DNA from: Podarcis erhardii
Taxonomy: Eukaryota
Length of the DNA: 64,000 bases
Assembly: GCA_964252035.1 (NCBI GenBank)
Contig: OZ176202.1
Reading direction: 5' to 3' (one strand)
A model generated the notes under the pieces. That model saw only the letters and a list, made by a program, of their open reading frames with translations, was not told where the DNA came from and searched no databases. The position numbers were made by a program, and so were the translations under genes. Positions 2,527 through 35,632 of the stretch are shown one piece after another; within the stretch, counting starts at the first letter, position 1, and the number at the start of each line of letters is the position of its first letter.

Positions 2527-2771
2527 CTAGAAAATTTCAGAATGCTTTTATCATCAGAGAAGTCATCATTTAAAATCTATAAAGCTGAAAGTCTATAAGC
2601 AGCCACTTATTCTCTCAGAGTGAGAATTGGAGCAGGGTGCGGGGAGGATAAAGGCTTAAAAATAAATGAATAGGATACAGAATTAAACGACTATAACAAT
2701 ACAAAAAAATGAGAATATGAAATAGTGCTTAAAATGGTAAAATAAAATCAACAGAAAATAAATGGAAATAC

Positions 2772-3098
2772 CAGCATTTCAGTTTGTTGTTTCACAAGCA
2801 AGTCAGTATTGTAGTCTTGGACTGCCAGTTTGCTCAGTTTCTCATGTACTTCATTCAGCCAATTCATCAATTCAACTTCATCCTCTCCAAAAATCTGAGC
2901 ATTGCAATAGGCTTGCTGTAGAAGCTGAGCTCTACTGCCACTTTTCTCTCGAATCTCAATGTATTGGGCTTCTGAAGAATCTAGTTTCTCCTGCACCATT
3001 TCCTTATCTTCCTTGGAGCTCAATGCCTTTAAAGCCTGACCAATATTAATAGCTTGCTCCAAATTTTTGTTGCGAGTGGCGATGTCTTCCTCAAAGGC
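2772..3098 (-). CDS. DST: DST exon, 327 nt = 109 aa (AFEEDIA...KQQTEML), phase 0 to 0
   Basis: catttag|GCC acceptor, CTG|gtattt donor; overlaps ORF 2748..3062. Confidence 0.92.
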
Positions 3099-3327
3099 CT
3101 AAATGAAGTTTTCAAAGTAGTAAGAAAAAGAAAAGAAAAACAAGCAAACAAAAGAAACCATAAAACCAAATATGAAGACAACTCAAGAACAACCAAAAGA
3201 ATATAACTTTGATGGTAAAAGAAGAATATAAACAAAGTAATAAAAAAATGTGTTGGGGGGAATACTCCACTTTTGGTTTACAAATCATAAAATAATTGCC
3301 GCAATGAAAGGCACATTAAGATCTTAC

Positions 3328-3487
3328 TTTATGTTGAGAAATCTGCTGTTGTAGTTTGGAAGCCTGTGTTCCAATGGGTTCTGAATTTGAAAGCTTCTTT
3401 TCAGTGATGGTTAGCCACTCAACCAGTGGTTCTAAAGTTTCATGGAATTGCTGTGCTACAGCTGAGATACCTTCCAACTGACGATTC
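3328..3487 (-). CDS. DST: DST exon, 160 nt ([14 protein letters not shown]...ISQHK), phase 2 to 0
   Basis: ttgtag|G acceptor, AAA|gtaaga donor; ORF 3316..3513. Confidence 0.93.
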
Positions 3488-3895
3488 CTACAATATGTGA
3501 AAACAAAGCACATTTTGTGGCATGAGGGATGTATGAAATACTAAAAAGTTAAAACCAGCGCTTGGAAAGAACTACTTCGGTTTAATTATGTTCAATGAAT
3601 TACTTTGAAAATCTCTGAACTACACCTAAAAGTAGTTCCCATAAATGGAAGATTATGGGAGACATCCACTTTACTACAAGAACGGGTGATTATGTGATAC
3701 TGATTTCCCGATATTATTTCACTGAAATTTCTAAAAATAAAACTTGTAATATACTCAGAGCCATTTTCTCATTTAGCTTCAAATGCGAATCTGAAACTGG
3801 ATGAAAATGTTGCTATAGCTCCACATTAGTTTCTAATGCTGTATCAAGGAGTACACCCTACTGTACCCCTAAGTGAATGCAAACATTTCAGGTAC

Positions 3896-4062
3896 CTTGT
3901 TTCTGCTTTATCAAGCAGTGCATCCCATCTGCTATCCAGGAGGCTCAGCTGTTTCAAGATCTTCTCTTTATCAGCGGGCTCTGCTGACTCTGCAATTTTC
4001 TCCCCTTCACGCTTGATTAGTTCAACAGTGGGTCTGCGGTCATCCAGCAATCTCTGGAGAAG
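3896..4062 (-). CDS. DST: DST exon, 167 nt ([10 protein letters not shown]...KAETR), phase 0 to 2
   Basis: ctccag|CTT acceptor, AAG|gtacct donor; ORF 3844..4050. Confidence 0.93.
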
Positions 4063-6509
4063 CTGGAGACAAAATAATCAAAAATCAAATTGCCAGGAAA
4101 TGACTGTTCACTACAAGGCTGTAAAAAGATTAGGAGGCAGATTCTTCAAGGTCTTGTTTACTGGCAAAAAGAGGCAGGCTTAAGGGAACAATTTTCTGAG
4201 ATGGCAGGAAATTGTGAGGGTGCCAGCAGTATTACAATGCAAGTGCCATAAATTGCATAAATAAGTAATTTCATTATGAGAGCGAGCAAACTGTGCCAAT
4301 CTTAGCATCAGTTGTAAAGGTCTAGCATCCTTCCAAATGTTTTCATTCAGATTTCTTTTCAATGCTATCCTGGAAGCTCTGGAAGGGCTACAGATATATA
4401 TGACTTATATGAGGTATGATGTTGACATGTGAAGGGAGAGGGGGGAATCAAGTGGGACATTTTATAACACATGACAGTGCTGGGAACTTTTGGGGAAGCT
4501 TTTCCATTTTGGAAAAAGAAAAGATGGGAAATTTTGCACTTCACCTAAGAACCCTCCCCATCTTTTCAATACGCTGGTGATGTTTGCAACTATCCACTGC
4601 AATCCAGAGAAATATCTGTTTGTTTATATAGTGCTCACCTTTCGAAACACTTGTGGCCGCATTCAATAAGATGAACACAATTCAGGGCTTAATGATGCGC
4701 CTAAGACCAAATTATTTTAATAGGGAATCAAACATGTTATAACATTCTCTGGATTCTGTCCCAAATTTTCAGTACAAACATATGATCATTTTGGAGATTA
4801 TTATGTTGCGCGCAGCTGCAACTTTGGATACTCACTTTGGCCAGACAACCTGAGGACTTTATTCACTAAGCTTCATGCAGTGCTCTTCCCTGAGGGTTGC
4901 CTTCTATGTTTCAGCCAAAAATCCCCCCTTCTCTCTCCTACTGCCTTTTGTTAAGACTGCTCAGAGAGCACAACTTCTCTCTGATGCTGTGCATGCTGTG
5001 ACCTGCTCTTCCCTTGCTCATACATTTATTTTGAACAGGAAAGTAATTATGGATCTGGTTTACAGAGTTTGTTGTGCTGTATTTACTCCACAACTGCCAA
5101 TTCAATATTTAATATGAACCTTCTCCCCCCCCCCTTTTTTTAAGTGAGGGTCTAACAATCCATCAGCAACTGTGTTACAAACAATTGTTGAACAATCTGA
5201 AGCAGGGGTGTTTGACATTATTAACTGAAGATACAGGCACACCAAGATGTTACCCTAAATCAAAACAGATTCTACAAAACTCTAGAGACGGAAGTCAGGA
5301 AGTAAGGGGTGGAGCAGAAGCTGACATCAGGTACAGATTTCATCCCTTGCTAACCCATATGTATAGGCAACTCGTATAAATCCACACTGAATGGCATATA
5401 TGGGAAAAAGAGATTAGCTGAGAAGGGGTGGGGTGGAGGGTTGTCAAAATGATGAAGGAGGATTGAAGCCCTGACAAAATTTTGAACTTTATTTCAACTT
5501 AAGGGAGTAGCTCTACAATGTTCTTCCCCCTGCCCCTTTTCACAATATCAGTGATGTCTTTTCAAACATCAGATTGCTTTTGATCCTTGAAATAATTGTT
5601 TTTGATGTGCATCCAGTGAAATGTACACGTGCATGAAATGATGCCAAGAACCAGCACAGATATTCCAGAGTTTTCCTTGCAATATATACAGAAAACTGGT
5701 CCAATGAAATGATTGTTTGTGCTATACATGGCATCTGTCCCTCCCAGTCTGCACCAGCTCCCCACATTTCCCAAAGAAGTGAAGAAAACCACATTTCCCC
5801 GGACAAAGGATGCAATCAATGCCTGGATGGGAGGCTGCCTGGGAACACCATTGAGTTCCATGGTGAAAGAAGAGCTGGATATAAATTTACATACCAACTA
5901 TTTGTTATATTTCTTGGTCACTTTTCTCATTGAATGAACCAAAGCAATTTAGGGCTCATCCCACACTTCTGCTTGCCTAGCCACTTTCCCCCAGGAAAAC
6001 CCGCTGTCTACCACTGAATCCGAGCCATACAAGTAAAAGGCAGGACTAACAGATCCTGTCCCACTAATATGCTACAGTCTGGATGCCTCTGTTAAAATGA
6101 GTGGAGAATTCCAAAATGAAAGTATCAAAGGGCAAATCTTTAAAGAGAATTTCACAGATTGGGTTGAGAAAATTTGCCCTTCCCCTGAAAAAAGCCAAAC
6201 ACATCCCCCACAGAAGCATCCATGACAACCATCCTAAGTGATGGGATGACAGAGACTATGGAAAGGTATTTTTTTTCAGGTTCTTTTGCAATTGCACCTC
6301 TTATAGCGCACGTCTAATACACACTCAGCCACACTGTTATCCAGGCCGTCACATGTTATTACTGTTATTAATTGCCCACTATTCATCCTAAGGCCCCGGG
6401 TGGGTTACAACATTAACACACAGCTTTAAAAACAGTTTAAAATACCCCACTGAGCAGGTGACAGAGAAAATATAATTAATCTAAAGATAGATAAATAACT
6501 TCCACTCAC

Positions 6510-6680
6510 TTTCTGCTCCTGTATTTGGGCCTTCACAACTTTGAACTCAGCAGATGGAGGCTTCTGATTAGCCACAAGGTCTTCTGTGTCAATAAGCCAG
6601 CTAAGGATAGATTCGACAGCATCTTGAAACCTCCCACAGTGGAGCAGTGCCTCTTGCAACTGGGCTGCTCTTTGAGCAAC
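6510..6680 (-). CDS. DST: DST exon, 171 nt ([16 protein letters not shown]...IQEQK), phase 0 to 0
   Basis: tgttag|GTT acceptor, AAA|gtgagt donor; ORF 6426..6659. Confidence 0.95.
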
Positions 6681-6682
6681 CT

Positions 6683-6765
6683 AACAAACAAAACAAAACA
6701 AAACAAAACAAAACAAAACAAAACAAAACAAAACAAAACAAAACAAAACAAAACAAAACAAAACA
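6683..6765. repeat. (AAAAC)n microsatellite, ~16 units, abutting a DST splice acceptor
   Basis: Directly visible. Confidence 0.97.
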
Positions 6766-7055: not shown

Positions 7056-7295
7056 NNNNNNNNNNNNNNNNNNNNNNNNNNNNNNNNNNNNNNNNNNNNN
7101 NNNNNNNNNNNNNNNNNNNNNNNNNNNNNNNNNNNNNNNNNNNNNNNNNNNNNNNNNNNNNNNNNNNNNNNNNNNNNNNNNNNNNNNNNNNNNNNNNNNN
7201 NNNNNNNNNNNNNNNNNNNNNNNNNNNNNNNNNNNNNNNNNNNNNNNNNNNNNNNNNNNNNNNNNNNNNNNNNNNNNNNNNNNNNNNNNNNNNNN
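7056..7295. other. Assembly gap, 240 N
   Basis: Run of N. Confidence 1.
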
Positions 7296-7400
7296 GCCCA
7301 TCTGGCTGGGTTTCCCCAGCCACTCTGGGCAGCTTCCAACGAAAGATTAAAAATACATTGAAACATCAGTTATTAAAAACTTCCCTAAACAGGGCTGAAG
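7296..7400 (-). mobile_element. L2 LINE 3' end fragment adjacent to the assembly gap
   Basis: gcccatctggctgggtttccccagccactctgggc...aaaaacttccctaaacagggctg resembles lacertid L2 3' ends. Confidence 0.6.
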
Positions 7401-7747: not shown

Positions 7748-7909
7748 CTTTTTGTTGAGAGTTTTCCATCTTGTGTTAACATCCTCAAGATCACGCTCAA
7801 GGTTATCAGTACTAGCATTTTTAGCAGCACTCTGAATAAGGCCTTGACCCAACCAATTTACCTCCTGTTGCTTAACCTGCAGTGGTTCAATCTTTTCCTT
7901 CTCGAATAC
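7748..7909 (-). CDS. DST: DST exon, 162 nt ([11 protein letters not shown]...KTLNKK), phase 0 to 0
   Basis: ctgaag|GTA acceptor, AAG|gtatgt donor; ORF 7739..8029. Confidence 0.93.
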
Positions 7910-8426
7910 CTTCAGATCAAAAGGAAAAGAAAGAAAGAAAGGCAAAGGCACATTTAGATTATTAAGTCTGGAACATGCTGAGCATAAGTAACGACCAGAG
8001 CAGATATCAGTAGTAAAATCACACAGCATGTCATGAACATAGTGTTGAAAGACAGTATTTAGCTACAGAGTGTACATGTAAAATTGCTCTTAATGTTGTA
8101 AACACAAAACAACTCAGAGTAAATTATATACACATTAACCCAAACAGGAGTTAAGAAACTGCTATTACATAAAAAAAAACCAAGCACTGTATTTAAAAGG
8201 AAGAGACAAACATAGTGCCCCATACTGAATCTTCCTAATATAGATGCTCAAACAATATTTAAAGCAAAAGGTACACGTTGTGGACACCTATGTCAAACTA
8301 AAGAGGATGACATATTGTGGGTAGTAATTGTTCAGATATCTGTTCACAATAGCCCATTCTTCTTGGGGCTATGCAACTCTGTGCAAACAGTTATCCTTTG
8401 CGTATGGCCAGCAGACACAAGTAGCC

Positions 8427-9120
8427 CATAAAAACATAAGAGCCCTGATGGATCATGCCAAATGCCCATCTAGACCAACATCTTTTTCTCACAGTGGCCA
8501 ACCAGATGCCTGTAGGAAGCTTGAAAGCAGGACTTGAGAGCAAAAAGGACTTGTGACTCTGGCGTACAGAAGCATACTTCTTCCAACAGAGAGCATAGAC
8601 ATCATAGCTAGCAGCCACTGACAGCTCTATCTTCGGTGAATTTGTCTATTTCTTTTTTTAAGACAATCACAGTAATGGTCACCACTACTTCTTTGCCACT
8701 ATTCACTGCATGAAGAAGTTCTTTCTTCAGTACTGTCCTGAATCTTCCAACATTTAGCTTCATACAATGGTCCTGGGTACTAGTATGATTCAGCCAATTT
8801 GGATAGATCACTTTGGATTTCCTTGCAATCTTTTTGTTCTAACCACCCTGAACAACTTGGTACCATCAGCAACCTCAGCTACGATGCTGATCACTTTTAT
8901 AATTTATAATCAAGTTTAAAAGTCCATGTCCCAATGCTGATCCCTTAATTGGGAGAACTGCCCATTTATTCCTACTGTCTGCTTCCTGTTCCTTAATTAA
9001 TTGCAGAACAGTAGGAGGACCTCTCCTTTTATTCCACAATTAAGCTTACTAAGGAGTCTGTTGTGAAGTACTTTGTCAAACCCTTTCTGAAAGACCAAAT
9101 ACACAGTGCCCAGAGTCTAT
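8427..9120 (-). mobile_element. CR1 LINE 3' fragment (RT C-terminus plus 3' UTR)
   Basis: Reverse strand has gctgatggtaccaagttgttcagggtg (degenerate ADDTKLFRV); left end resembles squamate CR1 3' termini. Confidence 0.75.
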
Positions 9121-9162
9121 ATAGTAGAGTTTGAAAGTATGAGTAGTAACGGTGGACAAGGG

Positions 9163-9290
9163 TTACAGATAGGTAGCCGTGTTGGTCTGCCATAGTCAAA
9201 ACAAAACAAATTCCTTCCAGTAGCACCTTAAAGACCAACTAAGTCAGTTCTTGGTATGAGCTTTTGTGTGCATGCACACTTCTTCAGATA
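9163..9290. mobile_element. Penelope-like element terminal fragment
   Basis: gtagccgtgttggtctg...gtagcaccttaaagaccaac...atgagctt...cacttcttcagatac resembles reptile Penelope pLTR ends as I recall them. Confidence 0.55.
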
Positions 9291-10103
9291 CAAGGGAAAT
9301 GCTTAAAGTTTGTTGAGGACAAGGGAAAGTTTGTTGGTGGACAAGGGAAATGCTTAAAGTTTGTTGAGGAAATTAATCATCTGAATATGCTCAGCATATG
9401 TTTCTGTGGTGCATAATGATTTGCATAGCCATTTAAGGATGATGCAGTGCTCTTAGTTCTAATAGGAGGAGCTGGTGTTGGGCAACGTGGCTCCTACAGA
9501 CCAAGTGAGCAGTGAGATGCTGGGCACATGCAGGAAGGGACCTGCCCCAGTCCTAACTGCACAATGGAGAAATGCAAGCGCTATCCAACGATTTGGGGGC
9601 CACTATAGTATGGTGAGCCTGGACCTCAGGAATGGCCTGGGGGAATGAGCTGATCATGTGACTAAGGAACTACACCAGCATTCACCTTCTAGATAAGACT
9701 AGTAATGGTTATATTGTTTTAGAAGATACTGAAAAACAGTGGGGACCATGTCCCTTTATTTCCCAGGTGGTCTTCATTGGCAAGAAATTCAAGCATGCTT
9801 CACACAATGATATCATAATGCAGGTTAACTCAACCCACCAACCTAAGTGATGTTCATTTGAGGACTTGCAAAGGCTAGTGACAGAAAATATTCCACAGGC
9901 ATCAAATGCTGTTGGTGGGTTATGAACCCAGGCTATACAAACTGTGGTCTTAAAGCTTCTTACCTTTGAAATACTCCCTCCCCTCCCCCCAAATCTTCTT
10001 TTTCTTCTTCTTCTACTACTACTAAGACACTGTCCCTTGGCAGCAATTTCACTATAGTCAGCAAAATATTGTGAAGCCATTGTACTGCAATACTGTACTG
10101 AGC

Positions 10104-10109
10104 TTTATT
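10104..10109 (-). terminator. Candidate polyadenylation signal AATAAA about 2 kb downstream of the nested ORF stop
   Basis: Minus-strand AATAAAGCTCAGTACAGTATTGCAGTACA; motif only, no transcript evidence. Confidence 0.2.
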
Positions 10110-10769
10110 ATTATAGCTTTACTAGCAAATATAGTCCACATCCTGAATATATATTTCAGCTGCCACTAGTAATATCATTCCCTGAATACAAGCAATGTTA
10201 TGGGGATACTACAAGTGTACCTCAGTATGGCTAAAGTTATTTCTCAGAACCTATGAAGCTAGACACTCAAGTAGCCCAGGACACCCAAATTCCTAGAACA
10301 GTCTGAAAATAAAGCGTGTTTATAGTTGATGTACCTCAATATCAGCTTTAAGTAATTTTTATGCTCACATAATTGAAAACAAAAATGATAAGAAGCCTCC
10401 CCAAGTTGGGATACATAAATTGTACACCAAAATGGTCAAGCACAACACTAATAGGAAAGCAGAAACTTGCTATGTACATAGTGTAAGAAACCCAGATTTT
10501 CTAGGATAGTCTGCAAACAGCACATTTTCACACCTAAGTTTACGTCATAACAGCGGCCAGCACTTCAACAGACAGCAAGCACATTTGACACACAGGACAG
10601 TGTGTGACCCATCTCTCCTCAAGGCCTTGAATCCACACAAATAACCGGGAGAAGGGGGTTTCGCAGAGGCAGCAAGGAACTTAAGTCCGAACATGGACAG
10701 CTCACACACATTTGACACTACATGCAATAATCCTCAGACACAGTGGTGTGTTACATAGTAGCAACCAGG

Positions 10770-10770
<1 letters not shown>

Positions 10771-10810
<40 letters not shown>

Positions 10811-10814
10811 ACAC
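10771..10814. repeat. (AC)n microsatellite
   Basis: Directly visible. Confidence 0.95.
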
Positions 10815-12075
10815 AATGCTGTTTTTGATGCACTCAATAGCACTACCTATTTGCAGGACATTGTGGGATTTGTTAAAGCAGAGTTCTGAGGAACCAAGTA
10901 GTTGAAAACAGCAAACAGGTCTTACCTTTCCCACAAAATAATATATAATATGGGCAAGTTCTCTTTACTTTAGAGAAATAAACAAGGGCTGGGATGCAAA
11001 AGCTAATTTACACATACCCAAGTGTTAGCTCAGTAGTATCTTTGGCAATCAAACAGGCAGGCACATGTACACACCCCAGGTTCCATAAACTACTTTTGAA
11101 ATTCCCCTCTCTTTCAAAAGAAGCTTCCTGTGTTTGAGGTTGCTGTGTGAGAAACACAAGTCCTGCTCCAGTTTAGGCCCATGGAACTAGTAATTCAGTA
11201 CTTCAATCCAACTCTCTTCTATTTCAGATGTTCATATACAGTATTTTTAAGATAATTCCATAGCAATCCAAACTGAGTTGTTCCCCTTGATTTGTTGTTT
11301 AGATACACATACCTACTCACAAAAGTAGGACTTGAGGCTAGAGTTTGCCAGAACAGCTTAGCAACAAGTCCTAAAATAACTCAAGACACAACCAGATCAG
11401 AGTGACCAAAAACAAAAAGAACAAAATTAAATTAAAGACTTCACAAGCTCCCCATGCTTATTACAAAGCTGTTTTCTACTTCCTTACTTCATTCACCGCT
11501 CAGTAAATGTTACAAGATCCCTTGTAAAAAAAATCCCCTACAACTTTAGGACTACTTTTTGGCATGAAGATGCAAGGAAATAATTTCAGTACGTGCAACA
11601 AGCCTTTAATCTGTGTACTTTGGAAACCGCAGCAATCTGAGCATCGTTGTGTATACCTTTATGATGAACGGTGCAATCCTATACGTGTCAACTCAGAAGA
11701 AGCATGCCCATCGGGTTTCATGGGCCTTACTCCCATGAAAGTGTGTACAGTATATGGCTGCAGCTGAAATCTGGTTAAATCTGAATAGGGAAGGCCTATC
11801 TGCCCTTGAATGGCATTGGCTGCTTGAAACATAATTTGAGGGGAGGGGAGGAGGGGGTGCTGAACATCAATGCCTAGTGGAAGCATTCCAAATAAAGGGT
11901 AACAGGCACCATCTGGACAATAAATAGCCATGCAACCAAACAGCTGGAAGCAATCAACCCTGTCACAAACTGCCCTTAATCAATTTACTGAAGTGACCAT
12001 CTCGCCAATTTCTGCCTTCTAATAACTTGTTGGGCAAATGATTCTAAAGGAATTCTTTGGGTAGATTAGCAAAAT

Positions 12076-13470
12076 CTAAACATAAGCATTCATGATGCAA
12101 TTACAGAAGAAAAATTTAAAAAAAATATTTAAAAAATAACCCACCCTGCAGCATGAAAAGAATGCATTTAAGTTTGGAATTACCTTATAAGACAACATGC
12201 CATTGCACACTGTATCCAAGGTTTGTTCTATTTGCATGCCTGTAGTCCAAAAGCTGAATTCAGCGCTGATTGGATTTGCTTTTTGACAGCATGTGGTATT
12301 ATTAGCCTCTAAAGCCTGACAGGACAATTCTATTGCACTTGTATGGGCCATATTACTTTCCTCAGTTTCATGCAAAATCACATATTTTACTAAGTCCGTT
12401 TCACTAGCATGTAAAGCTGCATCATCATCATAAATATCTATATCCTGAGTTGCAATATCCAGGAGGTCCTTTTCAATCATCCTGTCTTGGGTGTCTAATG
12501 GCTCATTAACTTTAGCGCTGTTCCTCACTTCCTCTTTGTCTAAAGTGAAATCATGTTCCCTCTCACCATCCAGGAGCCATTGGGGATGTGCTAAGAGGTC
12601 TTCTTTCAAATATGTCAGTGGACTGCAACGTCCATCTCCTTCCCCTTGGTTGCCCTCATAGTTCCAGAAAGGGTCTTGCTCTATATGTGAAGCATTCTGC
12701 AATTTTACTTGACAGTGTCCACTGGTAGGGGCACTTCTGGAGGTAAGCAATGAAATTTGATGTTCACTACTAGAAATGATAGGAGAAAATGATCCAAATT
12801 TACCTACAAACTGATTATCGTCTATGGAAGATATGCTCCTAAATTGAGTTTGTTCCCCTTCTAGCACATCTTGTTTTTCTTCTCTTTCTGCTGGAGGACT
12901 GCACAGACCAGAGTCGTCTTCTTCGGAAGTTAGAGAACTAGTCCCACATTTGACCTGGCCTGTTGCTGCTAAGTCGGACACATCAACAGTCCCAGCAAGT
13001 GAACACTCACTTTTATTTGCATAGTCTGCAAAGTTTGGTGGAACAAGCATCCTCCAGGATCTCCTATGTTCTTTCTTTTCTGTGTGATACTTTGCTTTGG
13101 GCAAGCCAGCTGTTCGAATGATGTCACTGTTCAGCTTAAGGGCATCAAAGATCATTTTTTCATCTAGCTTATTGGCTTCCCGTCCTCTGAGTTCAAAGAC
13201 ACTAGAAGAGGAGAGGGCACCATTGGAGCACAATGTACTAAGGTCCAGTGTTCTATGACTATACGGCAAAGTCCGATCTGAGAAATGCCTGGAGGAGAGG
13301 CTGCCTTTAGAACCTGAGTCAATCTGTTCATTCAGCCGCACTGTGTCATAGATTGACCTCTGGGGAACATAACAGTCCTCAATATTTATATCCTCTTCTT
13401 CTTCATCACCTTTTCCTACACAAGGAGGATTCTGGCGTAAACAGTCTGGCCTGCTCAGCGGCTTCCCCAT
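12076..13470 (-). CDS. KIAA0754-like ORF nested in the DST intron (464 aa if unspliced; 429 codons if spliced at the donor after 12184); probable alternative first coding exon
   Basis: ATG at 13470 in strong Kozak context (gaaATGG) with an in-frame TAA at 13513-13515 upstream. The first ~150 aa carry the motifs MGKPLSRPDCLR, EDCYVPQRSIYDT, KLDEKMIFDALKL and RRSW, which I recall from the N-terminus of KIAA0754 nested in MACF1. Confidence 0.82.
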   Translation of the reverse strand: MGKPLSRPDCLRQNPPCVGKGDEEEEDINIEDCYVPQRSIYDTVRLNEQIDSGSKGSLSSRHFSDRTLPYSHRTLDLSTLCSNGALSSSSVFELRGREANKLDEKMIFDALKLNSDIIRTAGLPKAKYHTEKKEHRRSWRMLVPPNFADYANKSECSLAGTVDVSDLAATGQVKCGTSSLTSEEDDSGLCSPPAEREEKQDVLEGEQTQFRSISSIDDNQFVGKFGSFSPIISSSEHQISLLTSRSAPTSGHCQVKLQNASHIEQDPFWNYEGNQGEGDGRCSPLTYLKEDLLAHPQWLLDGEREHDFTLDKEEVRNSAKVNEPLDTQDRMIEKDLLDIATQDIDIYDDDAALHASETDLVKYVILHETEESNMAHTSAIELSCQALEANNTTCCQKANPISAEFSFWTTGMQIEQTLDTVCNGMLSYKVIPNLNAFFSCCRVGYFLNIFFKFFFCNCIMNAYV

Positions 13471-13989
13471 TTCTGCAGGAATTAACAGGTCTAGCACTGC
13501 TGCTAGGCTATCTTATTGGAGACACGCAACACACATAAAGTAAAAATTAAAATAAAGTAATAGAAAAGCAGTTTTTAAAAAGTACAGTAAACTTGCCCTC
13601 AGCAGAAAGATGCTTACATACTAAAACACAGGAAATAATTTATGAGGCGGTTAAGGTCGTAATCAGTGCATCTGTGTAAGTTTACCTGGCTGTGATTTAA
13701 AACATTTCTCCCCCTGCCCCTAAAATATAAAGTGCTTGAGCTTAAGGGGGTGGGGAGAGGGGAAACAAAAAACCCCCACACCTTTTAATATTTTAAAATA
13801 CTAACTCAATGCACAAAGACATCAACAAAATGTACAAACCCCCAAACCTCAGGAAAATCTTTAAGTGGCTCAAAAGACTCAGAACTTCCCACATAGCATT
13901 CCATTTCAATTTTTAGGTCAAAATGTGTGTCTTAAATCTCCAGATTAAGTCTTCAAAATGAATCAGCATTATAGCAGGCAGCACGCTAT

Positions 13990-14900
13990 ATTCAGGAGGT
14001 GACAGATTAACTGTAATCCATTTAAATGGCTTGCAGAATTCCATCTCCTTTATAAATAAGCCATGTTGTGGACGCTTTTGAAGAAAAACAAACCAGAAGA
14101 GCTGTGGACTGTGGAGACCAAGGCACAGAGAAAGGCTTCAGGAAAAACAAAGGTATATCCAGAGTTGTAATAATAATAATAATAATAATAAAAGAAGAAG
14201 CTTTCTCCCCCTTTTTTGGCAGCAGCTATAAATAACCTCGATTCAAAAGGCAGTTTATTCCTTGCTTCCTTAAAGCTTCTCTGTGGCGCGTTCAGAAGTT
14301 CCATGGGAAACACAACAGTTTTCTGAGGAGCCAGACCAATGAAATAATAATACAAAAAAGCAACGGAACAGAATTAGTAGAAAAAGAAACTTTCCCCCCA
14401 GTTTCACTCGCAGAACACATTCCTTGAAAGTTGTTGTCCTGTTTTAAGGCAACACAGCAGGAAACTAGAGCGTTTCTTCCTCCACTCCGGCACAAAGGCA
14501 CAACAGATTCACATTCTGTTTAAATTCAGCAGGACTTTTTTTCTTTTTTTTTCTTTTTTTGCATAAACGGTGGCTAAAAGAGCGTGGTCACTGTTTTCAT
14601 CTCCGTCTTGAAGCGCAGCTGTAGCGAAGAAGGCATTAAAAAGAGCTCACAACAATAAACGCTCACATGTCCTGCCCAGCGCAGCTGATAAGCTTTCCGG
14701 CTCTCCCTGGTTTCTTATGGTCTGACAGGCATCCCTCCCAATAGTGAGCTTAAAAGAAACGCCCTTTGCTATTCTTTAGGCAACATCTGCTCCTATCGCA
14801 TTCGTTCCCTGAGTATTATTCCAACCGAGCATTAGGAGGTGCCTGACCTCTTAGCTCTTCCCCCTTACGCTTCCTGCCCCACATGACTTTACTTAGCCAT
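13990..14900 (-). promoter_or_regulatory. Candidate internal promoter / 5' region for the nested KIAA0754-like exon
   Basis: About 20 CpGs counted by eye in 14280-14880, well above the flanks; two GCGCAGCTG E-box motifs (14613, 14679); TATA/MEF2-like TTATTTATAAAGG on the minus strand at 14047-14059. Confidence 0.35.
14166..14191. repeat. (TAA)n microsatellite
   Basis: Directly visible. Confidence 0.9.
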
Positions 14901-17900
14901 CTTTCACTTTTACTGTTTGTCTTGTCTCTGAACGAGGCTGAGCCTTTTCAGGGGGAGGTGCACAAAGGAGCAAGTTCCTGTCTGCAGCACTCCTGCATAT
15001 CGGAGTCTGTGCTCTGTAATTCTGGAGGAAAAGAGGGTGGGTGGGTGGTGGCTCACAAGCAGAATGGAAAAACCGGTGCTAATTAGTTCAAAATGTCAAA
15101 AATTTAGTACATATTGCTTAACCGGGTAACCTGACACCATACAAATAGGGACCAGACTACCCAGGACCCTTCTAAAACACTGACAAACTGCACTTTTTCT
15201 GCTTCATAACAAAAATAATAATCCAGTACTTACAAATCATGCAGATTAACAGGAATCTGAATATAGTGGATGGTCACTTTTAATGGTATGTAGCATTTTA
15301 AACTAAACTAACCAGCTGTATAATAAGAATTCAATCAAATTGAATTACTTTCCACCATCACCATAAATCAATTTTAATTAACAGCCAGATCTTACTTCTT
15401 AGCAAGCCCCATGAAAAATCTCCATAGGATTGCATCCTTCACTCTATATTTGTAACACATGTACATTATATTCTATAATTAGGGATTTAGCCAGCAAATT
15501 GGTCTCTCTGAATGACTACAGAATGCATTCTTCATTCACAATCCAGTTAATCCAATGAAAAGGGATTTGCTTGATATTTTTTTACACTTCCTAGCTCTCA
15601 GACAACTGCAAATCCTAACATGCAAAGAAGTGCTGCAACTTTTCAGAAATTTCACCCAGTACTCCTAAAAACCGCACTCTATTGAGGTAATAGCATGAGT
15701 GGTTTTACTTATTTGTTTCTGGATCTCTTTAGATGGAAGGCATATTATATTTTTAATAAAATAAATAGCTAAAGCACTGAAGAGAGTAAAAATAATACAG
15801 AGCAAGGAGAGCAGCTCATTTCTTAAAGCTGGTGTATTGTTAATTTATTTGCCATATGTATACCAGCATATCTACATATAAAAATGCCCACGTTGTTAAC
15901 AACCATCATGTCCCACTAAAAAGACAATGTTTCATACCACAAGATGCAGTCACAACAAACCATATACAAAAACTACAGCAGAAAAGGATCCACTCCCTTG
16001 GGAAGGCAGCACTATAAGAAGGGATAGTTGAAGATAGGAATGAAGTTTCTGACAGTCCACTGTCATACATATTCACTACTCCAAACTAAATCTTATTGTG
16101 TGCCACGAAGGATATTCCCAAATAAAGTGCAGCAAGTGTTTTCAAAGCAGTGGCCCTGGATGGGGGGCAGGAGACACTATCTGGGCTCTGCTTCAAGCAG
16201 CAAAATGGGTCAGTACTGGAATGACAATGAACCTTAAGACCCTCCTTTGAAGGAAGTCTGTCACTCCCAACCCAGAATGTATTTATAGTCAGCTGAGCAT
16301 GGATTTGTTGAACAGGCACTGTACATGTCCAAGGCAGCACCTGAACACGCAGCTACTCCTTCCATTTAAAAGAATGGGGAAGACCATCTGTAAAGGAGCT
16401 CCATGTGAGCATTAGAATATACAGAGGGCTCTGGACAAAGGATAAGGTCTGTATGCAGGTAGCCACCCCAAATGTATGTTGAGTTTTTTCTTTAATGTAG
16501 TGATAATAAATTATTATTCTTTTTTAATTTTATATTTAAGCTGCAAAACAGATGCAAATATTGAAGTTGATGCAGCAACAAAATATAATTTTACTTTTGA
16601 AGGCGCCTGTGAAGAAACCACATACTTCAGGGAAGACTTAACACATTGCACTGATTCAATCAACAAGGTAAGAGGCCACCATCTACGACACCAACCTAAA
16701 CCAATTTAAATATTAGTTCAAGCTCATCAACTGGAATATTCATCCAGGCCCAGAGCTCCTATGAAGCGCAATTAGAAGGAACCTCTTGACATATATCTGA
16801 ACACTGGAAATATACTGAAACGACCCTTTCCGCATCTAGTAATGGTCTAAATGGGGGAGGGGATTTAATGAGCCATTCAGTGATAGAAACTGACATAAAT
16901 TCCATGTGCTTTAATAAATAAAAGAATAAATAAAGAGTGTAGCAGGTTTATGGCTGAAATATTTTGCAGACATTTCAAGGATTGTAATTACGTGGCAGAG
17001 ATTGAATGCTGCGTCCCCACAACCCCACCCTAGCATGAAGTAGCTCATTAAAATGTTCAGCAAAATACAAACTAAACAAGGGCTTTTGTTTTTCAGGATC
17101 ATCTTAGCTGGTTGGCTCTTTGTGAGGAAACGGGCATGGTGTAACCCAAGTAAAGCAAGTTCATCTGCTGAATTTTTCTTTTGCCCACGTTCATTCAATG
17201 CGTACTTTCTTTAAAGCACAAAGGTCTACAATAAAACTGAATGAAAGTGAGAGAATGAAAGAGAAACACCATGAAATACAATATGCCAGCTACTGTAAGT
17301 AACTGAAAATGTAGCTTTGATTGGAAACACTGGAAGATTTGTTCTTGGGTAGGATTTCTGAATACAAAACAAAATCCTCTTTTCTTTATGTAAATACCGA
17401 TAGATAAGATATAAGAACTACAAGCAGACAATCTTCTTCTCAGCTACCCAAAAGCAATACTCGTTAAAAGTGGACTGACTACTGTTAATTGTAAAAATAT
17501 ATGCTTATGGACCACCGTTCTTGGTAATGATTTCAAAGCAGAGTCACTAGTCGCAATTCCAATTTGCTATTCCCTTCCTCCAATGAGCTTGGGACTACCA
17601 CTTGACCTTTATTACTTTACTATTACTTAGTGGTCTGCTTTGCACGTCATGTTGTATATTCGTTTGTTTATTTCACAACATTTATATACCACTGATCATA
17701 ATAAAACCTCAGAGCGGTTTACAAAAAGAATAAACCAGTAACAATAACAGTAAAAAAAAAATCACTAAAAACAAGTATTTATAACATTCAAAACAAGTAA
17801 AAACATCAATAAGCTAAAACTGGGTCCAGGCACTGTTCCAAGGCATGCACAACTGCTCCTAATTCAGATGTTATGGCTGAGTGACACCAGCATACTTATG

Positions 17901-19574: not shown

Positions 19575-19770
19575 ATGCTAGGCCATGGGAGAACAAGCTT
19601 CAAATCCCCACTTGGTCATGAAGCTCACTGGGTGACCTTGGGCTAGTCACCAGTTCTCAGGCTAGCCTACAGGGCTGTTGTGAGGGTAATGGAGGGGGGG
19701 GAGCTTTATGCTGCCTTGATCTCTTTGGAGGCAAGGTGGGATATACAATGTAATAAATAATAAATAAATA
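19575..19770 (+). mobile_element. Old MIR/CORE-like SINE (related copies at ~2045-2170 (-), 47590-47810 (+), 57680-57860 (+))
   Basis: ttcaaatccccacttggtcatgaagctcactgggtgaccttgggctagtcac core and an (AATA)n tail. Confidence 0.6.
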
Positions 19771-19787
19771 TACAGTACCCCAATACA

Positions 19788-20148
19788 GGGGATGCGGGTG
19801 GCACTGTGGGTTAAACCACAGAGCCTAGGACTTGCCGATCAGAAGGTCGGCGGTTCGAATCCCCGTGACGGGGTGAGCTCCCATTGCTTGGTCCCTGCTC
19901 CTGCCAACTTAGTAGTTCGAAAGCACGTCAAAAATGCAAGTAGATAAATAGGTACCACTCCGGTGGGAAGGTAAACGGTGTTTCTGTGCACTGCTCTGGT
20001 TCGTCAGAAACAGCTTAGTCATGCTGGCCACATGTCCCGGAAGCTGTACGCTGGCTCCCTCGGCCAATAAAGCGAGATGAGCGCCGCAACCCCAGAGTTG
20101 GCCACAACTGGACCTAATGGTCAGGGGTCCCTTTACCTTTACCTTTAT
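19788..20148 (+). mobile_element. Sauria SINE, full length
   Basis: tRNA-like head with B box GGTTCGAATCC, (ACCTTT)n tail, 9-bp target-site duplication CCCAATACA at 19779-19787 and 20149-20157. Confidence 0.92.
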
Positions 20149-23093: not shown

Positions 23094-23914
23094 CTCTAGA
23101 ATAACAAAAGCTGCAGTTGACAACCCTTCTGCGTGCTTGAATGGAACCATGATTTAGTCTATTTGCACCCAGCCAGTTTTAAAATTACCATTAATAATGT
23201 CAGCTGTGGGAGAGGAGAGGAGAGGAGAACACAAGAAGCTCAGCTTTGCTGGAGATCTTCAAAGCAAAATGCAGGACATTCTGTTTTAAAACAACTTAAG
23301 AATGCTTCTCTAATAACTTTTGACCAAAGAGAAGACCATCTTCTCAGTTTCTAAATTGCTTCATGAGAACACTGAGCTGAGAACACTTCATACAACTTCA
23401 GACCACAACCCTCAAATTACTTGTAAATTCCAAGGACCCCCAAACCAAAGGAGCATGTGATATCACTTCCTGTTGGACAACTTAAGTCTTATTCATTACA
23501 AGGCAAATAAAAATGTTATGATGTAACTATTTTGCAGCAATTATGTTTATCCGTTGAAATTAGAGGAAGCATTTGAATTCATAAACAAACAAACAAACAA
23601 AACTTGCTTATTAATAAAGCTTTAGATCTCAAGACGGGAATGCATTGGGTGGGATGTATGTTATGTTAGATCTCACTCGTCTTAAAATAGGCAAAAAGCA
23701 CCCTCTGTTGGGAAACATGAAAAATGACTTTGAACGCAATTCTTAAGAAACTGACTGGCTTACAACACATGATCTATAAGCTGAAAAAGGAAGGCCAACC
23801 CAATCACTTTTCCTTGGGGGTCTAGACTACTAAGGAGCTCGCGTCACAATATTCTTACAGTTAGTTTTCATTTTACAATACAGAATTCTAAAAACTCAGA
23901 AAGGTCCTTCTTAC

Positions 23915-25389
23915 CTTAAATACGTTCAGCTGCTGATTTATCGTCTCAATTTCCATTCCAACAGACCCCTGGGACTCTTCATGCTCTTCAACTTCCCCAA
24001 GCAGTTTAGAAAACCCCTTTAGTTTACTGTAGAACTCTTCAACGCGGCTAATAGTCCCTTCAATCTGTTCATCTCTGGCTTTTGCTCTATCTAGCAACTT
24101 GTTGCACTGCTTATTTAAAGCCTCCAAGTCCCTTTTTATACCTGCAAGATCTGGAGAAGCTTCAGCTTCATTTGCTAGCATCATTTTGCAGGTATTATTT
24201 GCATTTTCATTACTGGTTATGAGTTCCTCCAACTTTTTCAGGAAAGTTTTTATATCCTTTCGCTGTGACTGCAGTGTGACAAGATCCCTACCCACAGAAT
24301 CCATGCTGTCCAATTCATCGTCGAACTCTGCAAACTGAGAAAACATCTCTCGGATGCTGTTTTGGAAATGGCCAATTCCCTGGAGTTTAGTCTCCAGGAA
24401 TGAACATTTATCTTCAACCTGCTGACTGATGGTGCTGAATTCTTCTTCTAATGTTTCTGCCTGCAACAAGAGGTCAGAGACACCTGATGAATCTGAAGCA
24501 TCTGCCACCAGTTCTTGGGCAAGCTTTTTTGTAAGGTCCACTTGAGCCTTCACAGCCTGGAGTGTTTTCTGCTGAGCCTGCATAATCGTCAAGTGTTTGT
24601 TACTGTAAGTCTGGGGTTTGAGAGAATCGTGTGTTTCCAGCTGTTCTCTGACATTCTTCAGCTGCTCTTCAACATCCTTTGATGACTCTTGAAACTCTTT
24701 CAGTCTCTGAGACATCTTTTCCAGACCATCTCTCTTAGCATGCAGTTGTTCTGTGACTATATCCATGTTCTGGATCAGCAGTGTCTTCTCCTCTTCAATA
24801 ATGTCTTTGTCTGTCTGACAGGCACTGAGTAATGTTTCAGCTGCATTACATAATAGCTCCACCAACCCTTGGTGTTTGTCTAGGTCCTTCTGCCAGCTCT
24901 TCACCTGAGTGATGGAATTCTCTAGTCGAGCAGGATCTATGCTCATTTCTATTTGAGAGATATTGCTTTGGCATTTCGCTATCCAGGGTTGTAGGTTTTC
25001 TACATGCTCTCTGTATCTAAGGGCTTTTTCCAAACAATCATTTAATTTATCTTGCCTTTCTTTAACTTGCTTGTTCATTTCATCCCAGTTACCTCTGAGC
25101 AAGTTCAGCTGGGCCTGCAGCTCAGCCTTTTCCGCTCCCTGAGTCTTCTGGAGTAAACTTTCGCCTTCTGCGATGATTTTTTCATAAGAACCAGTCTGGT
25201 CAGACAAGGCAGCCTTGAACTCTTTCTGATCATCAATTAATGTCCACAGAGACTCCAGCTTGGTAGAGATGGGACAAGGCTGATTCTGTTCTTCCTTCTT
25301 TTTGTCCAACCAGGCCTGAAAGTCCTTAGACATTTGCTGGAACTGATGAGAACTAACGTAAGTTGACTGAAGTTGCTCAATGTGATTGC
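23915..25389 (-). CDS. DST: DST large exon, 1475 nt, several spectrin repeats (GNHIEQLQ...QQLNVFK), phase 1 to 0
   Basis: ctgcag|GC acceptor, AAG|gtaaga donor; 533-aa ORF 23888..25489. Confidence 0.96.
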
Positions 25390-25902
25390 CTGCAGAAGAC
25401 AAACAAACAAACAAACAAACAAAAGTTCTTAAAATCCGTGTCTTTGAGTGGCTTCTAACTAGGATTTTGGTTGATTTTAATTTAATCAAAGAAACATTAT
25501 GTTATAGGAAAATGCACCCTATTGCAATTTGAGATGTTTTATTAAACATTATTCTTCATTGGAGCTTGTTAGCTGATGAGTTTATTGAAGACCACCAGAT
25601 TGGAAAATAATAGTATTGCAGCCTAAAATAATAACCCCTTGGATAATAATAATAATCCCTTGACAACAAGGGATTCTTGAGGGTGGGGAACTAATCAGGT
25701 AACCAGGATAGTATGATCACTAGTGCCACTTTAAACATCACAAACATAAACAACATGCACTATGAACAGTAAAGCTTGCAGTAATCCCTCAACAGTCATT
25801 GAGATAAAATGCTTCCAAAGATCACTGCCAGTCCTGTTACAAGATTACAGAACTCCTGTTGGGACTCCCTTGTTGAGTCTGAAACACACCCTCCCCAAAG
25901 GA

Positions 25903-34169: not shown

Positions 34170-35632
34170 TGGTTTCAGTTTTCTCTATACAAATGCACAG
34201 AGTACGGGAAACAAGCAAGAAAAACTTGAGCTCAGAATACAGGATGGCAAATATTATCTAATAGGCATTACTGGAACCTGGTGGAATGAGACTGGAATGA
34301 AGGAATTGAGGGGTATGACTCATTCAAAAGGAATAGATCAAACAAGAAGGGGGAGAAATAGCATTACATGTAAAAGAAGTGTACACTTGTGAAGAGATCC
34401 ATGAGACTATATGGGTAAAAATGGTAGGAGAAGGAACAGCAGTGACTTTGGACTGAAGACTTGGATGAAGCCTTCCTAGAGCTGATTGTCAAACATTCAA
34501 AAAGGAAAGATATAGTAGTCATGGGAGACTTCAACTACCCCAATATCTGTTGGAACTCAAACTCTGCCAAGAATTTAGGTAAAGGTAAAGGGACCCCTGA
34601 CCATTAGGTCCAGTCGTGACCGACTCTGGGGTTGCGACGCCCATCTCACTTTACTGGCCGAGGGAGCCGGCGTACAGCTTCCGGGTCATGTGGCCAGCAT
34701 GACTAAGCCGCTTCTGGCGAACCAAAGTAGCGCACGGAAACGCCGTTTACCTTCCCACCAGAGCGGTACCTATTTATCTACTTGCACTTTGACGTTCTTT
34801 CGAACTGCTAGGTTGGCAGGAGCAGGGACCGAGCAACGGGAGCTCACCCCGTCGCGGGGATTCGAACTGCCGATCTTCTGATCGGCAAGTGCTAGGCTCT
34901 GTGGTTTAACCCACAGCACCACCCGCGTCCCTTAGCCAAGAATTTAAGGTCCAACAAATCCCACAATTGGCTCTCTGACCATTTCATTTCCCAAAAGGTA
35001 GAAGAAGCAACAAGAGGGTCATCTATATTGGACCTGGTCCTCACCAACAGGGAGGAGCTGATCAAAAAGGTGGAAATACTCAGAAACCTAAGAGGAAGTG
35101 ATCATGCCCTCCTGGTTTCATGATACAGAGGAGAAGGGAAAGCTGAGTGTAGTCAAGAGATGCACTCTGGACTTTAAGAAGCTCAATTTCAAAAAGTTTA
35201 AGGAGCTACTGGGAGAAATCCCATGGTCAGAAATATTCAAAAGATAAGTGAGCCCCAGATAGATGGGAGTTTATTATAGGTGAAATATTAAAGGCCCAAA
35301 TGCCAATAATTCCAACAAGAAAGAAAAGCAGGAGGTAGCTAAAGAAACTGGTGTGGCTGCATAAGGAGCTGACAGATTAGCTGAGATGTACGAAGGGAAT
35401 GTATTATAAATGGAAGAAAGGAGAAATCACAAAGGAAGGGTAGATACAAGTATCCAACAGTTGCAAGGAGGTCAGGCAGGCCAAAGCTCAGAATGAAGTC
35501 AGGTTTGCAAGAGAGGTTAAAAATAACTTTAAAAGCTTATTCAGCTATGTTCGAAGCAAGAAGCAAGAACAATCAAGTAATAGGGCCCTTGTGTGAAGAA
35601 AACAGAAAAATGCTATTGAGTGACAGAGAGAA
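34170..35632 (+). mobile_element. Degraded CR1 LINE ORF2 fragment (APE endonuclease region and downstream linker)
   Basis: Translated motifs LYTNAQSTGNKQE, IVVMGDFNYPNICW, ILDLVLTN, GSDH, ELLGEIPW; stops and frameshifts present. Confidence 0.9.
34578..34934 (-). mobile_element. Sauria SINE, full length, inserted into a CR1 LINE
   Basis: Reverse complement of the 19788 copy (~90% identical by manual comparison); 12-bp TSD GCCAAGAATTTA at 34566-34577 and 34935-34946. Confidence 0.93.

What the first reader, a model, noticed from the sequence alone, without database searches (positions are those of the whole stretch)
7748..12184. In-frame donor links the nested ORF to the C-terminal half of dystonin: a predicted short isoform without actin-binding or plakin domains
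Seen: after 429 codons the ORF has a good donor TATAAG|GTAATT (exon end 12184) in phase 0, and the next DST exon (7909) starts in phase 0. A second in-frame donor AGG|GTGGGT ends at 12145. The codons beyond these donors are T-rich and intron-like (FLNIFFKFFFCNC). The ORF cannot be an in-frame internal cassette from exon 23915, because the nearby acceptors give early stops. Inference: it is an alternative first exon producing novel N-terminus + distal spectrin repeats + (by known DST architecture) EF-hand/GAR microtubule-binding tail.
Basis: partly seen in the sequence, partly recalled or inferred. Interest (0 to 1): 0.78.

Follow-up and report, generated by a model that had tools for sequence, protein, structure and literature searches.

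The report
Known short dystonin isoform's first exon
The open reading frame nested in this lizard's dystonin gene is the conserved alternative first exon of a short dystonin isoform that keeps the microtubule-binding half and drops the actin-binding half. This isoform is already in many vertebrate gene catalogues but has not been studied functionally.

Summary
On the minus strand, ATG 13470 opens 429 codons that end at AAG|GTAATT (last exon base 12184, phase 0). The next dystonin (DST) exon, 7909-7748, starts and ends in phase 0.

- Annotated "dystonin" proteins of 2,100-2,700 aa in mammals, birds, turtles, snakes, a lizard and fish start with this ORF. They join it at the same residue to the ortholog of exon 7909.
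- They carry spectrin repeats, EF-hands and a GAS2/GAR domain, and no CH or plakin domains.
- Polyadenylated mRNA contigs of about 10 kb from a non-human mammal show the splice directly. They match the unspliced sequence exactly up to codon 431 and then continue into DST exons. Their 1.0-1.1 kb 5'UTR starts in a CpG island.
- Elgaria and Pogona keep TAAG|GTAATTC. They lose both the second donor (12145) and the acceptor-like CAG before the ATG.
- Indels inside the ORF are all multiples of three.

The paralogous exon in MACF1 is KIAA0754 ("MACF1 isoforms 6/7"). A 2017 spectraplakin review already noted an additional exon conserved between dystonin and MACF1 as a possible alternative start. I take that to be this one.

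Verdict: real, correctly read, already known at annotation level.

The parts
14200..15000 (-). Putative intronic promoter and start of the 5'UTR (inferred): a local CpG enrichment 0.75-1.5 kb upstream of the ATG
   Evidence: CpG o/e is 0.54-0.68 here against 0.22 for the whole window. In the mammal, the mRNA 5' ends fall in a CpG island 1.0-1.1 kb upstream of the ATG. The overlapping stretch 14700-15200 is the best-conserved flank among lizards, at 86% and 81%. No TSS data exist for this species.
14228..14286 (-). 59-nt non-coding element shared with the 5'UTR of the mammalian short-isoform mRNA
   Evidence: blastn: L002 387-444 against window 14286-14228, 78% identity, E 4e-7, at a roughly colinear distance from the ATG.
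12185..13470 (-). Coding part of the alternative first exon: 429 codons starting MGKPLSRPDC. The product is predicted to be mostly disordered.
   Evidence: 194 homologs, shark to mammals. Codons 1-215 are 91% identical to Elgaria and Pogona with no indels; codons 216-429 have only 9- and 6-nt indels. No Pfam family. AlphaFold2 mean pLDDT is 46.5, with one short helix at residues 104-113.
12178..12187 (-). 5' splice site AAG|GTAATT (last exon base 12184), phase 0
   Evidence: TAAG|GTAATTC is identical in three lizards. In all 67 read-through ORFs, Val (GTN) follows the junction residue, then mostly Ile, Thr or Met. Spliced and unspliced contigs of one mammal diverge exactly at the orthologous base.
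12140..12148 (-). Second in-frame donor-like site CAGG|GTGGGT (exon end 12145): probably not used
   Evidence: Disrupted in Elgaria and deleted in Pogona. No ortholog carries the 13 extra residues.
7910..12183 (-). Intron removed in the short isoform (4,274 nt). It is the 3' part of the 16-kb canonical DST intron 23914-7910.
   Evidence: Phases and splice sites read. P0204 maps 13470-12178 and then 7912-7742 with nothing between.
7748..7909 (-). First shared DST exon (54 codons, phase 0/0). It encodes the second half of a spectrin repeat.
   Evidence: Pfam Spectrin, profile positions 47-94 of 105. Its translation is near-identical to the segment that follows the junction in all short-isoform orthologs.
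2769..6680 (-). Next shared DST exons (approximate tblastn limits: 6680-6507, 4032-3895, 3489-3325, 3098-2769). The gene runs off the window start.
   Evidence: Residues 484-759 of the lizard short isoform P0204 map colinearly at 84-98% identity.
23915..25375 (-). Upstream canonical DST spectrin exon. It ends in phase 0 at 23915 and is skipped by the short isoform.
   Evidence: ORF 23888-25489 reads ...NVFK followed by GT. The mammalian short-isoform 5'UTRs have no similarity to any upstream DST exon.

Best explanation
Window 13470-12185 (minus strand) is the coding part of an alternative first exon of dystonin, transcribed from a promoter inside the 16-kb intron between the spectrin-repeat exons ending at 23915 and starting at 7909.

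Proposed mechanism:
- Transcription starts about 0.8-1.5 kb upstream of the ATG, in the CpG-enriched stretch 14200-15000. This is inferred.
- Translation starts at ATG 13470.
- After 429 codons the exon is spliced at AAG|GTAATT (12184) in phase 0 to exon 7909-7748, and on through the remaining DST exons.
- The product is about 2,400-2,700 aa. It has a mostly disordered 429-residue N-terminus with invariant short motifs, at least 14 spectrin repeats, an EF-hand pair, a GAS2/GAR microtubule-binding domain and the C-tail. It has no calponin-homology actin-binding domain, no plakin domain and no plakin repeats.
- It should therefore bind microtubules but not actin or intermediate filaments. Its location would be set by the new N-terminus: Gly2/Ser6 and Cys10/Cys17 are invariant and fit a myristoyl/palmitoyl anchor. 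This is inferred and untested.

Shown here: the ORF, the phases, donor conservation, the orthologous junction, the domain content of orthologs, and first-exon status in a mammal.

Inferred: use of the promoter and the splice in this lizard, the lipid anchor, and the function.
For: - ORF, donor and phases.
- Conservation from shark to mammals. Hagfish also has it, joined to spectrin repeats.
- One search lists dozens of 'Dystonin' entries of 2,100-2,700 aa from Ensembl/UniProt and NCBI that begin with this ORF. Alignment A2 shows the same junction ...SxK/Q|VFEKEEIEPLQ in lizard, snake, bird, mammals and fish. The sea-snake Ensembl model P0010 has it too.
- Pfam on P0224, P0221 and P0204 finds 11-14 spectrin stretches, EF-hands and GAS2, and no CH or plectin.
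- mRNA contigs L001-L003 are 9.9-10.1 kb with an 8.07-kb ORF, and two of them end in a poly(A) tail. They are 100% identical to the unspliced contig L007 from their 5' ends to the last base of codon 431, then diverge.
- Their 5' ends lie in a CpG island with GC 0.67-0.77 and o/e 0.7-0.98.
- The lizard donor is conserved, the CAG before the ATG is not, and ORF indels are 3n only.
- P0204 maps colinearly onto window exons 13470-12178, 7912-7742, 6680-6507 and onward.
- In Elgaria and Pogona the ORF sits inside the 7,900-aa DST gene on the same strand.
Against:
- NCBI annotates the ORF in Elgaria, Pogona, elephant and a barbet as a separate single-exon gene reading through the donor, so an unspliced product may also exist.
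- The junction falls in the middle of a spectrin repeat, so the first repeat of the short isoform is incomplete.
- The lizard promoter is only a modest CpG enrichment.
- Many of the long models are automatic gene builds.
Confidence: 0.85

Rival explanations
1. The ORF is an independent nested single-exon gene. Its transcript ignores the donor and ends in the intron, giving a stand-alone protein of about 464 aa with a species-specific tail. The long fusion models would be annotation artefacts. A weaker version, in which both products exist, is compatible with the best explanation.
For: NCBI models of 434-487 aa are named 'uncharacterized protein LOC...' in Elgaria, Pogona, Pogoniulus and elephant. 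A human adrenal cDNA (FLJ26213) covers the ORF alone. In one mammal, read-through contigs L005-L012 begin near the same 5' end as the spliced mRNAs. The 2017 review left open that the exon 'may be its own isoform'. Poly(A)-signal-like hexamers lie in the lizard intron at 11610, 10109 and further on.
Against: The residues after the donor are unconserved and differ in length everywhere, while the GT and the AG before it are invariant. Spliced polyadenylated mRNAs exist. None of the read-through contigs ends in a poly(A) tail, and they could be genomic DNA or pre-mRNA. As an exclusive explanation it is contradicted.
Confidence: 0.07
2. The ORF is an internal alternative (cassette or poison) exon of full-length dystonin. 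It would be entered through the CAG at 13474-13473 or another nearby acceptor.
For: A good-looking acceptor (pyrimidines followed by CAG) lies 2 nt before the ATG in this window.
Against: Entry from the phase-0 exon at 23915 is out of frame at every AG after the upstream in-frame stop. The CAG is absent in Elgaria and Pogona. The mammalian mRNAs have 1.0-1.1 kb of colinear 5'UTR and no upstream DST exon.
Confidence: 0.02
3. It is a chance ORF, or a decaying remnant in an intron, with no product.
For: No Pfam family. The predicted structure is mostly disordered.
Against: It is open in every vertebrate class sampled, with 31 invariant residues including Met1. ORF indels are 3n only, and the first 215 codons are 91% identical among lizards against 78-83% for the 5' flanks and 70-79% for the intron.
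Confidence: 0.01

Closest known systems
Short dystonin isoform annotated in other vertebrates, for example UniProt/Ensembl 'Dystonin' of Pseudonaja textilis (P0224), Suricata (P0208) and Balaenoptera (P0215, P0216), and NCBI 'dystonin' of Rhinolophus (P0211) and Phrynosoma (P0204)
   Same: Orthologous N-terminal exon at 50-78% identity, the same junction residue, the same following exon, and the same position inside DST.
   Different: Nothing structural differs. For this species the transcript is only predicted, and the C-terminal exons lie outside the window.
MACF1 isoforms 6/7 (formerly KIAA0754), the paralogous exon nested in MACF1
   Same: Same invariant N-terminal motifs (45% identity over the first ~160-190 residues). 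It is also annotated at residue 1 of proteins of 3,000-3,400 aa that have spectrin repeats, EF-hands and GAS2 but no CH. A hagfish protein has the same start, so the exon probably predates the DST/MACF1 split.
   Different: The MACF1 exon is two to three times longer (about 950-1,400 aa against about 430), and beyond the first ~160-190 residues it is unrelated.
The 'additional exon conserved between dystonin and MACF1' noted by Voelzmann et al. 2017 (bioRxiv 10.1101/122010, Fig. 1 legend)
   Same: [quoted passage not shown] I take it to be this exon.
   Different: The review gives no sequence in its text, so the identity is my inference. It did not settle which alternative holds. The contigs favour the alternative start.
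Internal-promoter isoforms of other giant spectrin-repeat genes: dystrophin Dp260/Dp140/Dp116/Dp71, short nesprins, and Drosophila Shot D-type (from general knowledge)
   Same: It works the same way. An intronic promoter with a unique first exon yields an N-terminally truncated protein that keeps the C-terminal modules and lacks the actin-binding domain.
   Different: These first exons are unrelated. Here the unique exon is unusually long (429 codons) and strongly conserved.

Membership tests
Short (MGKPLSRPDC-type) dystonin isoform, first exon | The ORF is orthologous to the N-terminus of annotated short dystonins | tested here: met
   77% identity to Phrynosoma P0204, 70% to Pseudonaja P0224, and 50-61% to bird and mammal proteins over the whole ORF.
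Short (MGKPLSRPDC-type) dystonin isoform, first exon | It lies inside DST, on the same strand, in the intron before the VFEKE... spectrin exon | tested here: met
   The window has DST spectrin exons on both sides. In Elgaria and Pogona the ORF is nested in the 7,900-aa CH/plakin/spectrin gene.
Short (MGKPLSRPDC-type) dystonin isoform, first exon | A conserved phase-0 donor at the orthologous codon, joined in frame to the next exon | tested here: met
   AAG|GTAATT at 12184 and a phase-0 exon at 7909. The donor is identical in three lizards. GTN follows the junction in all 67 read-through ORFs. Junction seen in orthologs.
Short (MGKPLSRPDC-type) dystonin isoform, first exon | It is a first exon, with its own TSS and no upstream DST exons in the mRNA | tested here: inconclusive
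   Met in a mammal: colinear 5'UTR and a CpG island. For the lizard the support is indirect: CpG enrichment, a conserved 59-nt element, and a non-conserved upstream CAG.
Short (MGKPLSRPDC-type) dystonin isoform, first exon | The spliced transcript is present in this species | not testable with these tools
No holder of the exon is on record as RNA.
Short (MGKPLSRPDC-type) dystonin isoform, first exon | The product ends with EF-hands and a GAS2/GAR domain and lacks CH and plakin domains | tested here: inconclusive
   True for orthologs P0204, P0224 and P0221. In this window the gene runs off the start after about 330 shared residues, so the tail is not visible here.
KIAA0754 / MACF1 isoforms 6/7 exon | It lies in MACF1 and is about 950-1,400 aa long | tested here: not met
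   It lies in DST and is 429 codons long. It is a paralog, not a member.
N-myristoylated / S-palmitoylated proteins | Gly2 after the initiator Met, a small residue at position 6, and nearby Cys residues | tested here: inconclusive
   M1, G2, S6, C10 and C17 are invariant in 37 sequences that include MACF1 paralogs. Lys3 is unusual but occurs in known substrates (from memory). No predictor or assay was available.

The most novel reading that the evidence does not exclude
The short isoform is an ancient, vertebrate-wide form of both spectraplakins that lacks the actin-binding domain and already existed before the DST/MACF1 duplication. Its invariant MGKPLSRPDC...C start would be a lipid anchor that tethers the microtubule-binding half to a membrane. 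Mutations or gene traps in the 5' half of Dst would spare it, so it could account for part of the phenotypic differences between Dst/DST alleles. No paper in the searchable library studies it.
Probability: 0.35. Interest if true: 0.55.

Novelty: already known. Interest (0 to 1): 0.3.

Why it matters
For genome annotation, this ORF should be attached to DST as an alternative first exon. NCBI currently calls it as a separate "uncharacterized LOC" gene in two other lizards.

For biology, the isoform is conserved from fish to mammals, and in paralogous form back to hagfish. Even so, I found it in only one figure legend of the literature I could search. It removes every actin-, plakin- and intermediate-filament-binding module and adds a conserved, possibly lipid-anchored, disordered head.

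Anyone interpreting DST or MACF1 variants, or mouse alleles located upstream of this exon, should know that a microtubule-binding product can still be made. None of this is new for this lizard in kind: it is an ortholog of an already catalogued isoform.

Tried and rejected
- **Read laying.** Local scripts either stayed at 7910 or above, or masked those places with N.
- **Pfam on the ORF.** No family matched. PF27015, listed for the long proteins, turned out to be a desmoplakin-type spectrin repeat rather than an N-terminal domain.
- **Structure prediction of the ORF.** The model is mostly disordered, so I ran no fold search.
- **Literature.** I found no functional study of this isoform. The only mention is the remark in 10.1101/122010. 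One query was malformed.
- **Second donor at 12145.** Rejected because it is not conserved.
- **Cassette-exon reading.** Rejected on frame, on loss of the CAG in other lizards, and on the mRNA 5'UTRs.
- **Invertebrate relatives.** I looked for them among the 47 phmmer hits. Every hit whose name I looked up was a vertebrate.
- **Human material.** P0054 is a human cDNA product returned. I used it only in alignment A1, one local BLAST database and script print-out, and one name look-up. I fetched no human contig. I take contigs L001-L012 to be a non-human mammal because their N-terminus differs from P0054 at several positions.
Full report
**What is in the sequence**

The window carries dystonin (DST) on the minus strand. 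It holds the giant plakin-repeat exon (63999-58915) and then a series of spectrin-repeat exons.

Inside the 16-kb intron between the exon ending ...NVFK|GT at 23915 and the exon 7909-7748 lies an ORF. Its ATG is at 13470. After 429 codons it reaches AAG|GTAATT, with the last exon base at 12184. The frame then runs on through 35 T-rich codons to a stop at 12076.

Exon 7909-7748 is 54 codons long, phase 0 at both ends, and has strong splice signals. Pfam matches it to the second half of a spectrin repeat.

I checked this. Between the upstream in-frame TAA (13515-13513) and the ATG there are six AG dinucleotides. None gives a phase-0 entry.

**Is it a real coding exon?**

Yes. The word-index search found 194 homologs of 236-750 aa, from whale shark and sturgeon through teleosts, squamates, turtles, birds and marsupials to placentals. 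The closest is Elgaria at 79%.

In a 37-sequence alignment that includes MACF1 paralogs, Met1, Gly2, Ser6, Cys10, Cys17 and the block D-C-Y-V-P-Q-R-S-I-Y-D-T are invariant.

I also aligned the window at DNA level against Elgaria (L013) and Pogona (L014):

| Region | Identity to Elgaria / Pogona | Indels |
|---|---|---|
| ORF codons 1-215 | 91% / 92% | none |
| ORF codons 216-429 | 82% / 73% | 9 and 6 nt only |
| 5' flanks (13471-15200) | 78-86% | many sizes, not multiples of three |
| Intron (11000-12184) | 70-79% | many sizes, not multiples of three |

The ORF has no Pfam family. AlphaFold2 with this alignment predicts disorder apart from one short helix (mean pLDDT 46.5). The product is therefore a conserved disordered head with linear motifs.

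**Is the donor real and conserved?**

- TAAG|GTAATTC is identical in the three lizards.
- In all 67 homologous ORFs that read through the junction, the residue after it is Val (GTN). Ile, Thr or Met mostly follows (an A at intron position +4). The last exon codon is Lys or Gln, which fits an exon ending in AG.
- Beyond that point the sequences are unrelated and of different lengths.
- The second donor at 12145 is disrupted in Elgaria and deleted in Pogona. No ortholog contains the 13 extra residues.

**Is it joined to the rest of dystonin?**

The short-protein search cannot see long relatives. I therefore queried with the first 180 residues of a 3,242-aa fish protein that starts with the same motif. 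This returned 72 long proteins in two groups:

- MACF1-type proteins of about 1,900-3,400 aa.
- Proteins named Dystonin, of 2,100-2,750 aa. They come from bear, meerkat, blue whale, beaver, pig, bat, titi monkey, eagle, two turtles, the brown snake, the lizard Phrynosoma, and several fishes.

Alignment A2 shows all of them going from ...SxK/Q directly into VFEKEEIEPLQ.KQQ.VNWLGQG... That is the translation of window exon 7909-7748 seen. A sea-snake Ensembl model does the same.

Pfam on the snake, lizard and mammal proteins finds 11-14 spectrin stretches, an EF-hand pair and GAS2. It finds no CH, SH3_10 or plectin repeats.

Residues 1-759 of the Phrynosoma protein map colinearly onto the window: 13470-12178, 7912-7742, 6680-6507, 4032-3895, 3489-3325 and 3098-2769. 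The remainder lies beyond the window start.

**Direct transcript evidence in another species**

Three Logan contigs of 9.9-10.1 kb from three runs (L001-L003) carry an uninterrupted 8,073-nt ORF for P0221. Two of them end in a poly(A) run. An ORF spanning dozens of exons without introns can only be cDNA.

The same species also yields unspliced contigs (L005-L012, protein P0072). The spliced contigs are 100% identical to unspliced L007 from their first base to L007 position 2618. That position is the last base of codon 431, the orthologous junction. After it they diverge.

Their 1.0-1.1 kb 5'UTRs are therefore colinear with the unspliced sequence. They contain no similarity to upstream DST exons. 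They begin inside a CpG island with GC 0.67-0.77 and o/e 0.7-0.98. That is the signature of an intronic promoter and a true first exon.

I take these contigs to be from a non-human mammal, because their N-terminus differs from the human cDNA product P0054.

**Back to the lizard**

- A 59-nt piece of that mammalian 5'UTR aligns to window 14286-14228 at a similar distance from the ATG.
- Window 14200-15000 has CpG o/e of 0.54-0.68 against 0.22 overall.
- 14700-15200 is the best-conserved flank among the lizards.
- The acceptor-like CAG just before the ATG is absent in Elgaria and Pogona.

I therefore place the promoter and TSS around 14.2-15.0 kb. This remains an inference.

**What could not be done**

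No run holding the exon is on record as RNA. Use of the splice in this species is therefore inferred from orthologs.

**Comparison with what is known**

- The paralogous exon in MACF1 is the former KIAA0754, now named "MACF1 isoforms 6/7".
- A hagfish protein starts the same way and continues into spectrin repeats. All named relatives are vertebrates.
- Voelzmann et al. [quoted passage not shown] I take this to be the same exon.
- I found no functional study.
- Mechanistically it resembles the internal-promoter isoforms of dystrophin and the nesprins, and the ABD-less D-type of Shot. This is from general knowledge.

**Rival still open**

NCBI annotates the ORF as a separate read-through gene in Elgaria, Pogona and others. 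A human cDNA covers it alone. An unspliced, stand-alone product of about 460 aa may coexist with the spliced isoform. As an exclusive explanation it is contradicted by the spliced mRNAs and by the invariant donor next to an unconserved tail.

**Verdict**

The earlier scan notes s1-263151 (nested KIAA0754 paralog) and s1-263235 (possible lipid anchor) concern the same ORF in this window and agree with what I found.

Noticed in passing
window 13411-13470 (-): The N-terminus MGKPLSRPDC...C has Gly2, Ser6, Cys10 and Cys17 invariant across DST and MACF1 versions from hagfish to mammals. This is compatible with N-myristoylation plus palmitoylation.
   Followed up: partly
window 7748-7909 (-): The short-isoform junction falls in the middle of a spectrin repeat (Pfam profile positions 47-94 of 105). 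The first repeat of the short isoform therefore lacks its first helix. Whether the conserved LDTVCNG segment at the end of the ORF substitutes for it is unknown.
   Followed up: no
L013 7001-8464 and L014 7001-8464: In the Elgaria and Pogona assemblies the orthologous ORF is annotated as a separate 487-aa 'uncharacterized LOC' gene nested in DST. It reads through the conserved donor, so it is probably an annotation that should be merged with DST.
   Followed up: partly
L005-L012 (mammalian Logan contigs): Unspliced contigs from eight runs start within about 150 nt of the 5' ends of the spliced mRNAs and run up to 2.4 kb into the intron without poly(A) tails. They could be pre-mRNA, intron-retaining transcripts, or genomic contigs broken at the GC-rich island.
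   Followed up: partly
window 34300-34900: This is the strongest CpG-rich patch of the window (GC 0.51-0.53, CpG o/e 0.76-0.79). It lies next to a plus-strand ORF (33976-34392) whose ...GITGTWWNE... motif looks like a LINE endonuclease fragment. A second CpG-rich patch lies at 19600-19900.
   Followed up: no
window ~7060-7300 and 6650-6750: An N-masked or gap stretch lies in the intron just downstream of exon 7748; I left it untouched. A (CAAAA/CAAAAC)n-type microsatellite lies next to exon 6680-6507.
   Followed up: no
window 14700-15200 (-): This non-coding stretch 1.2-1.7 kb upstream of the ATG is more conserved among three lizards (86% and 81%) than the sequence nearer the ORF. It is a candidate core promoter or enhancer of the short isoform.
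   Followed up: partly
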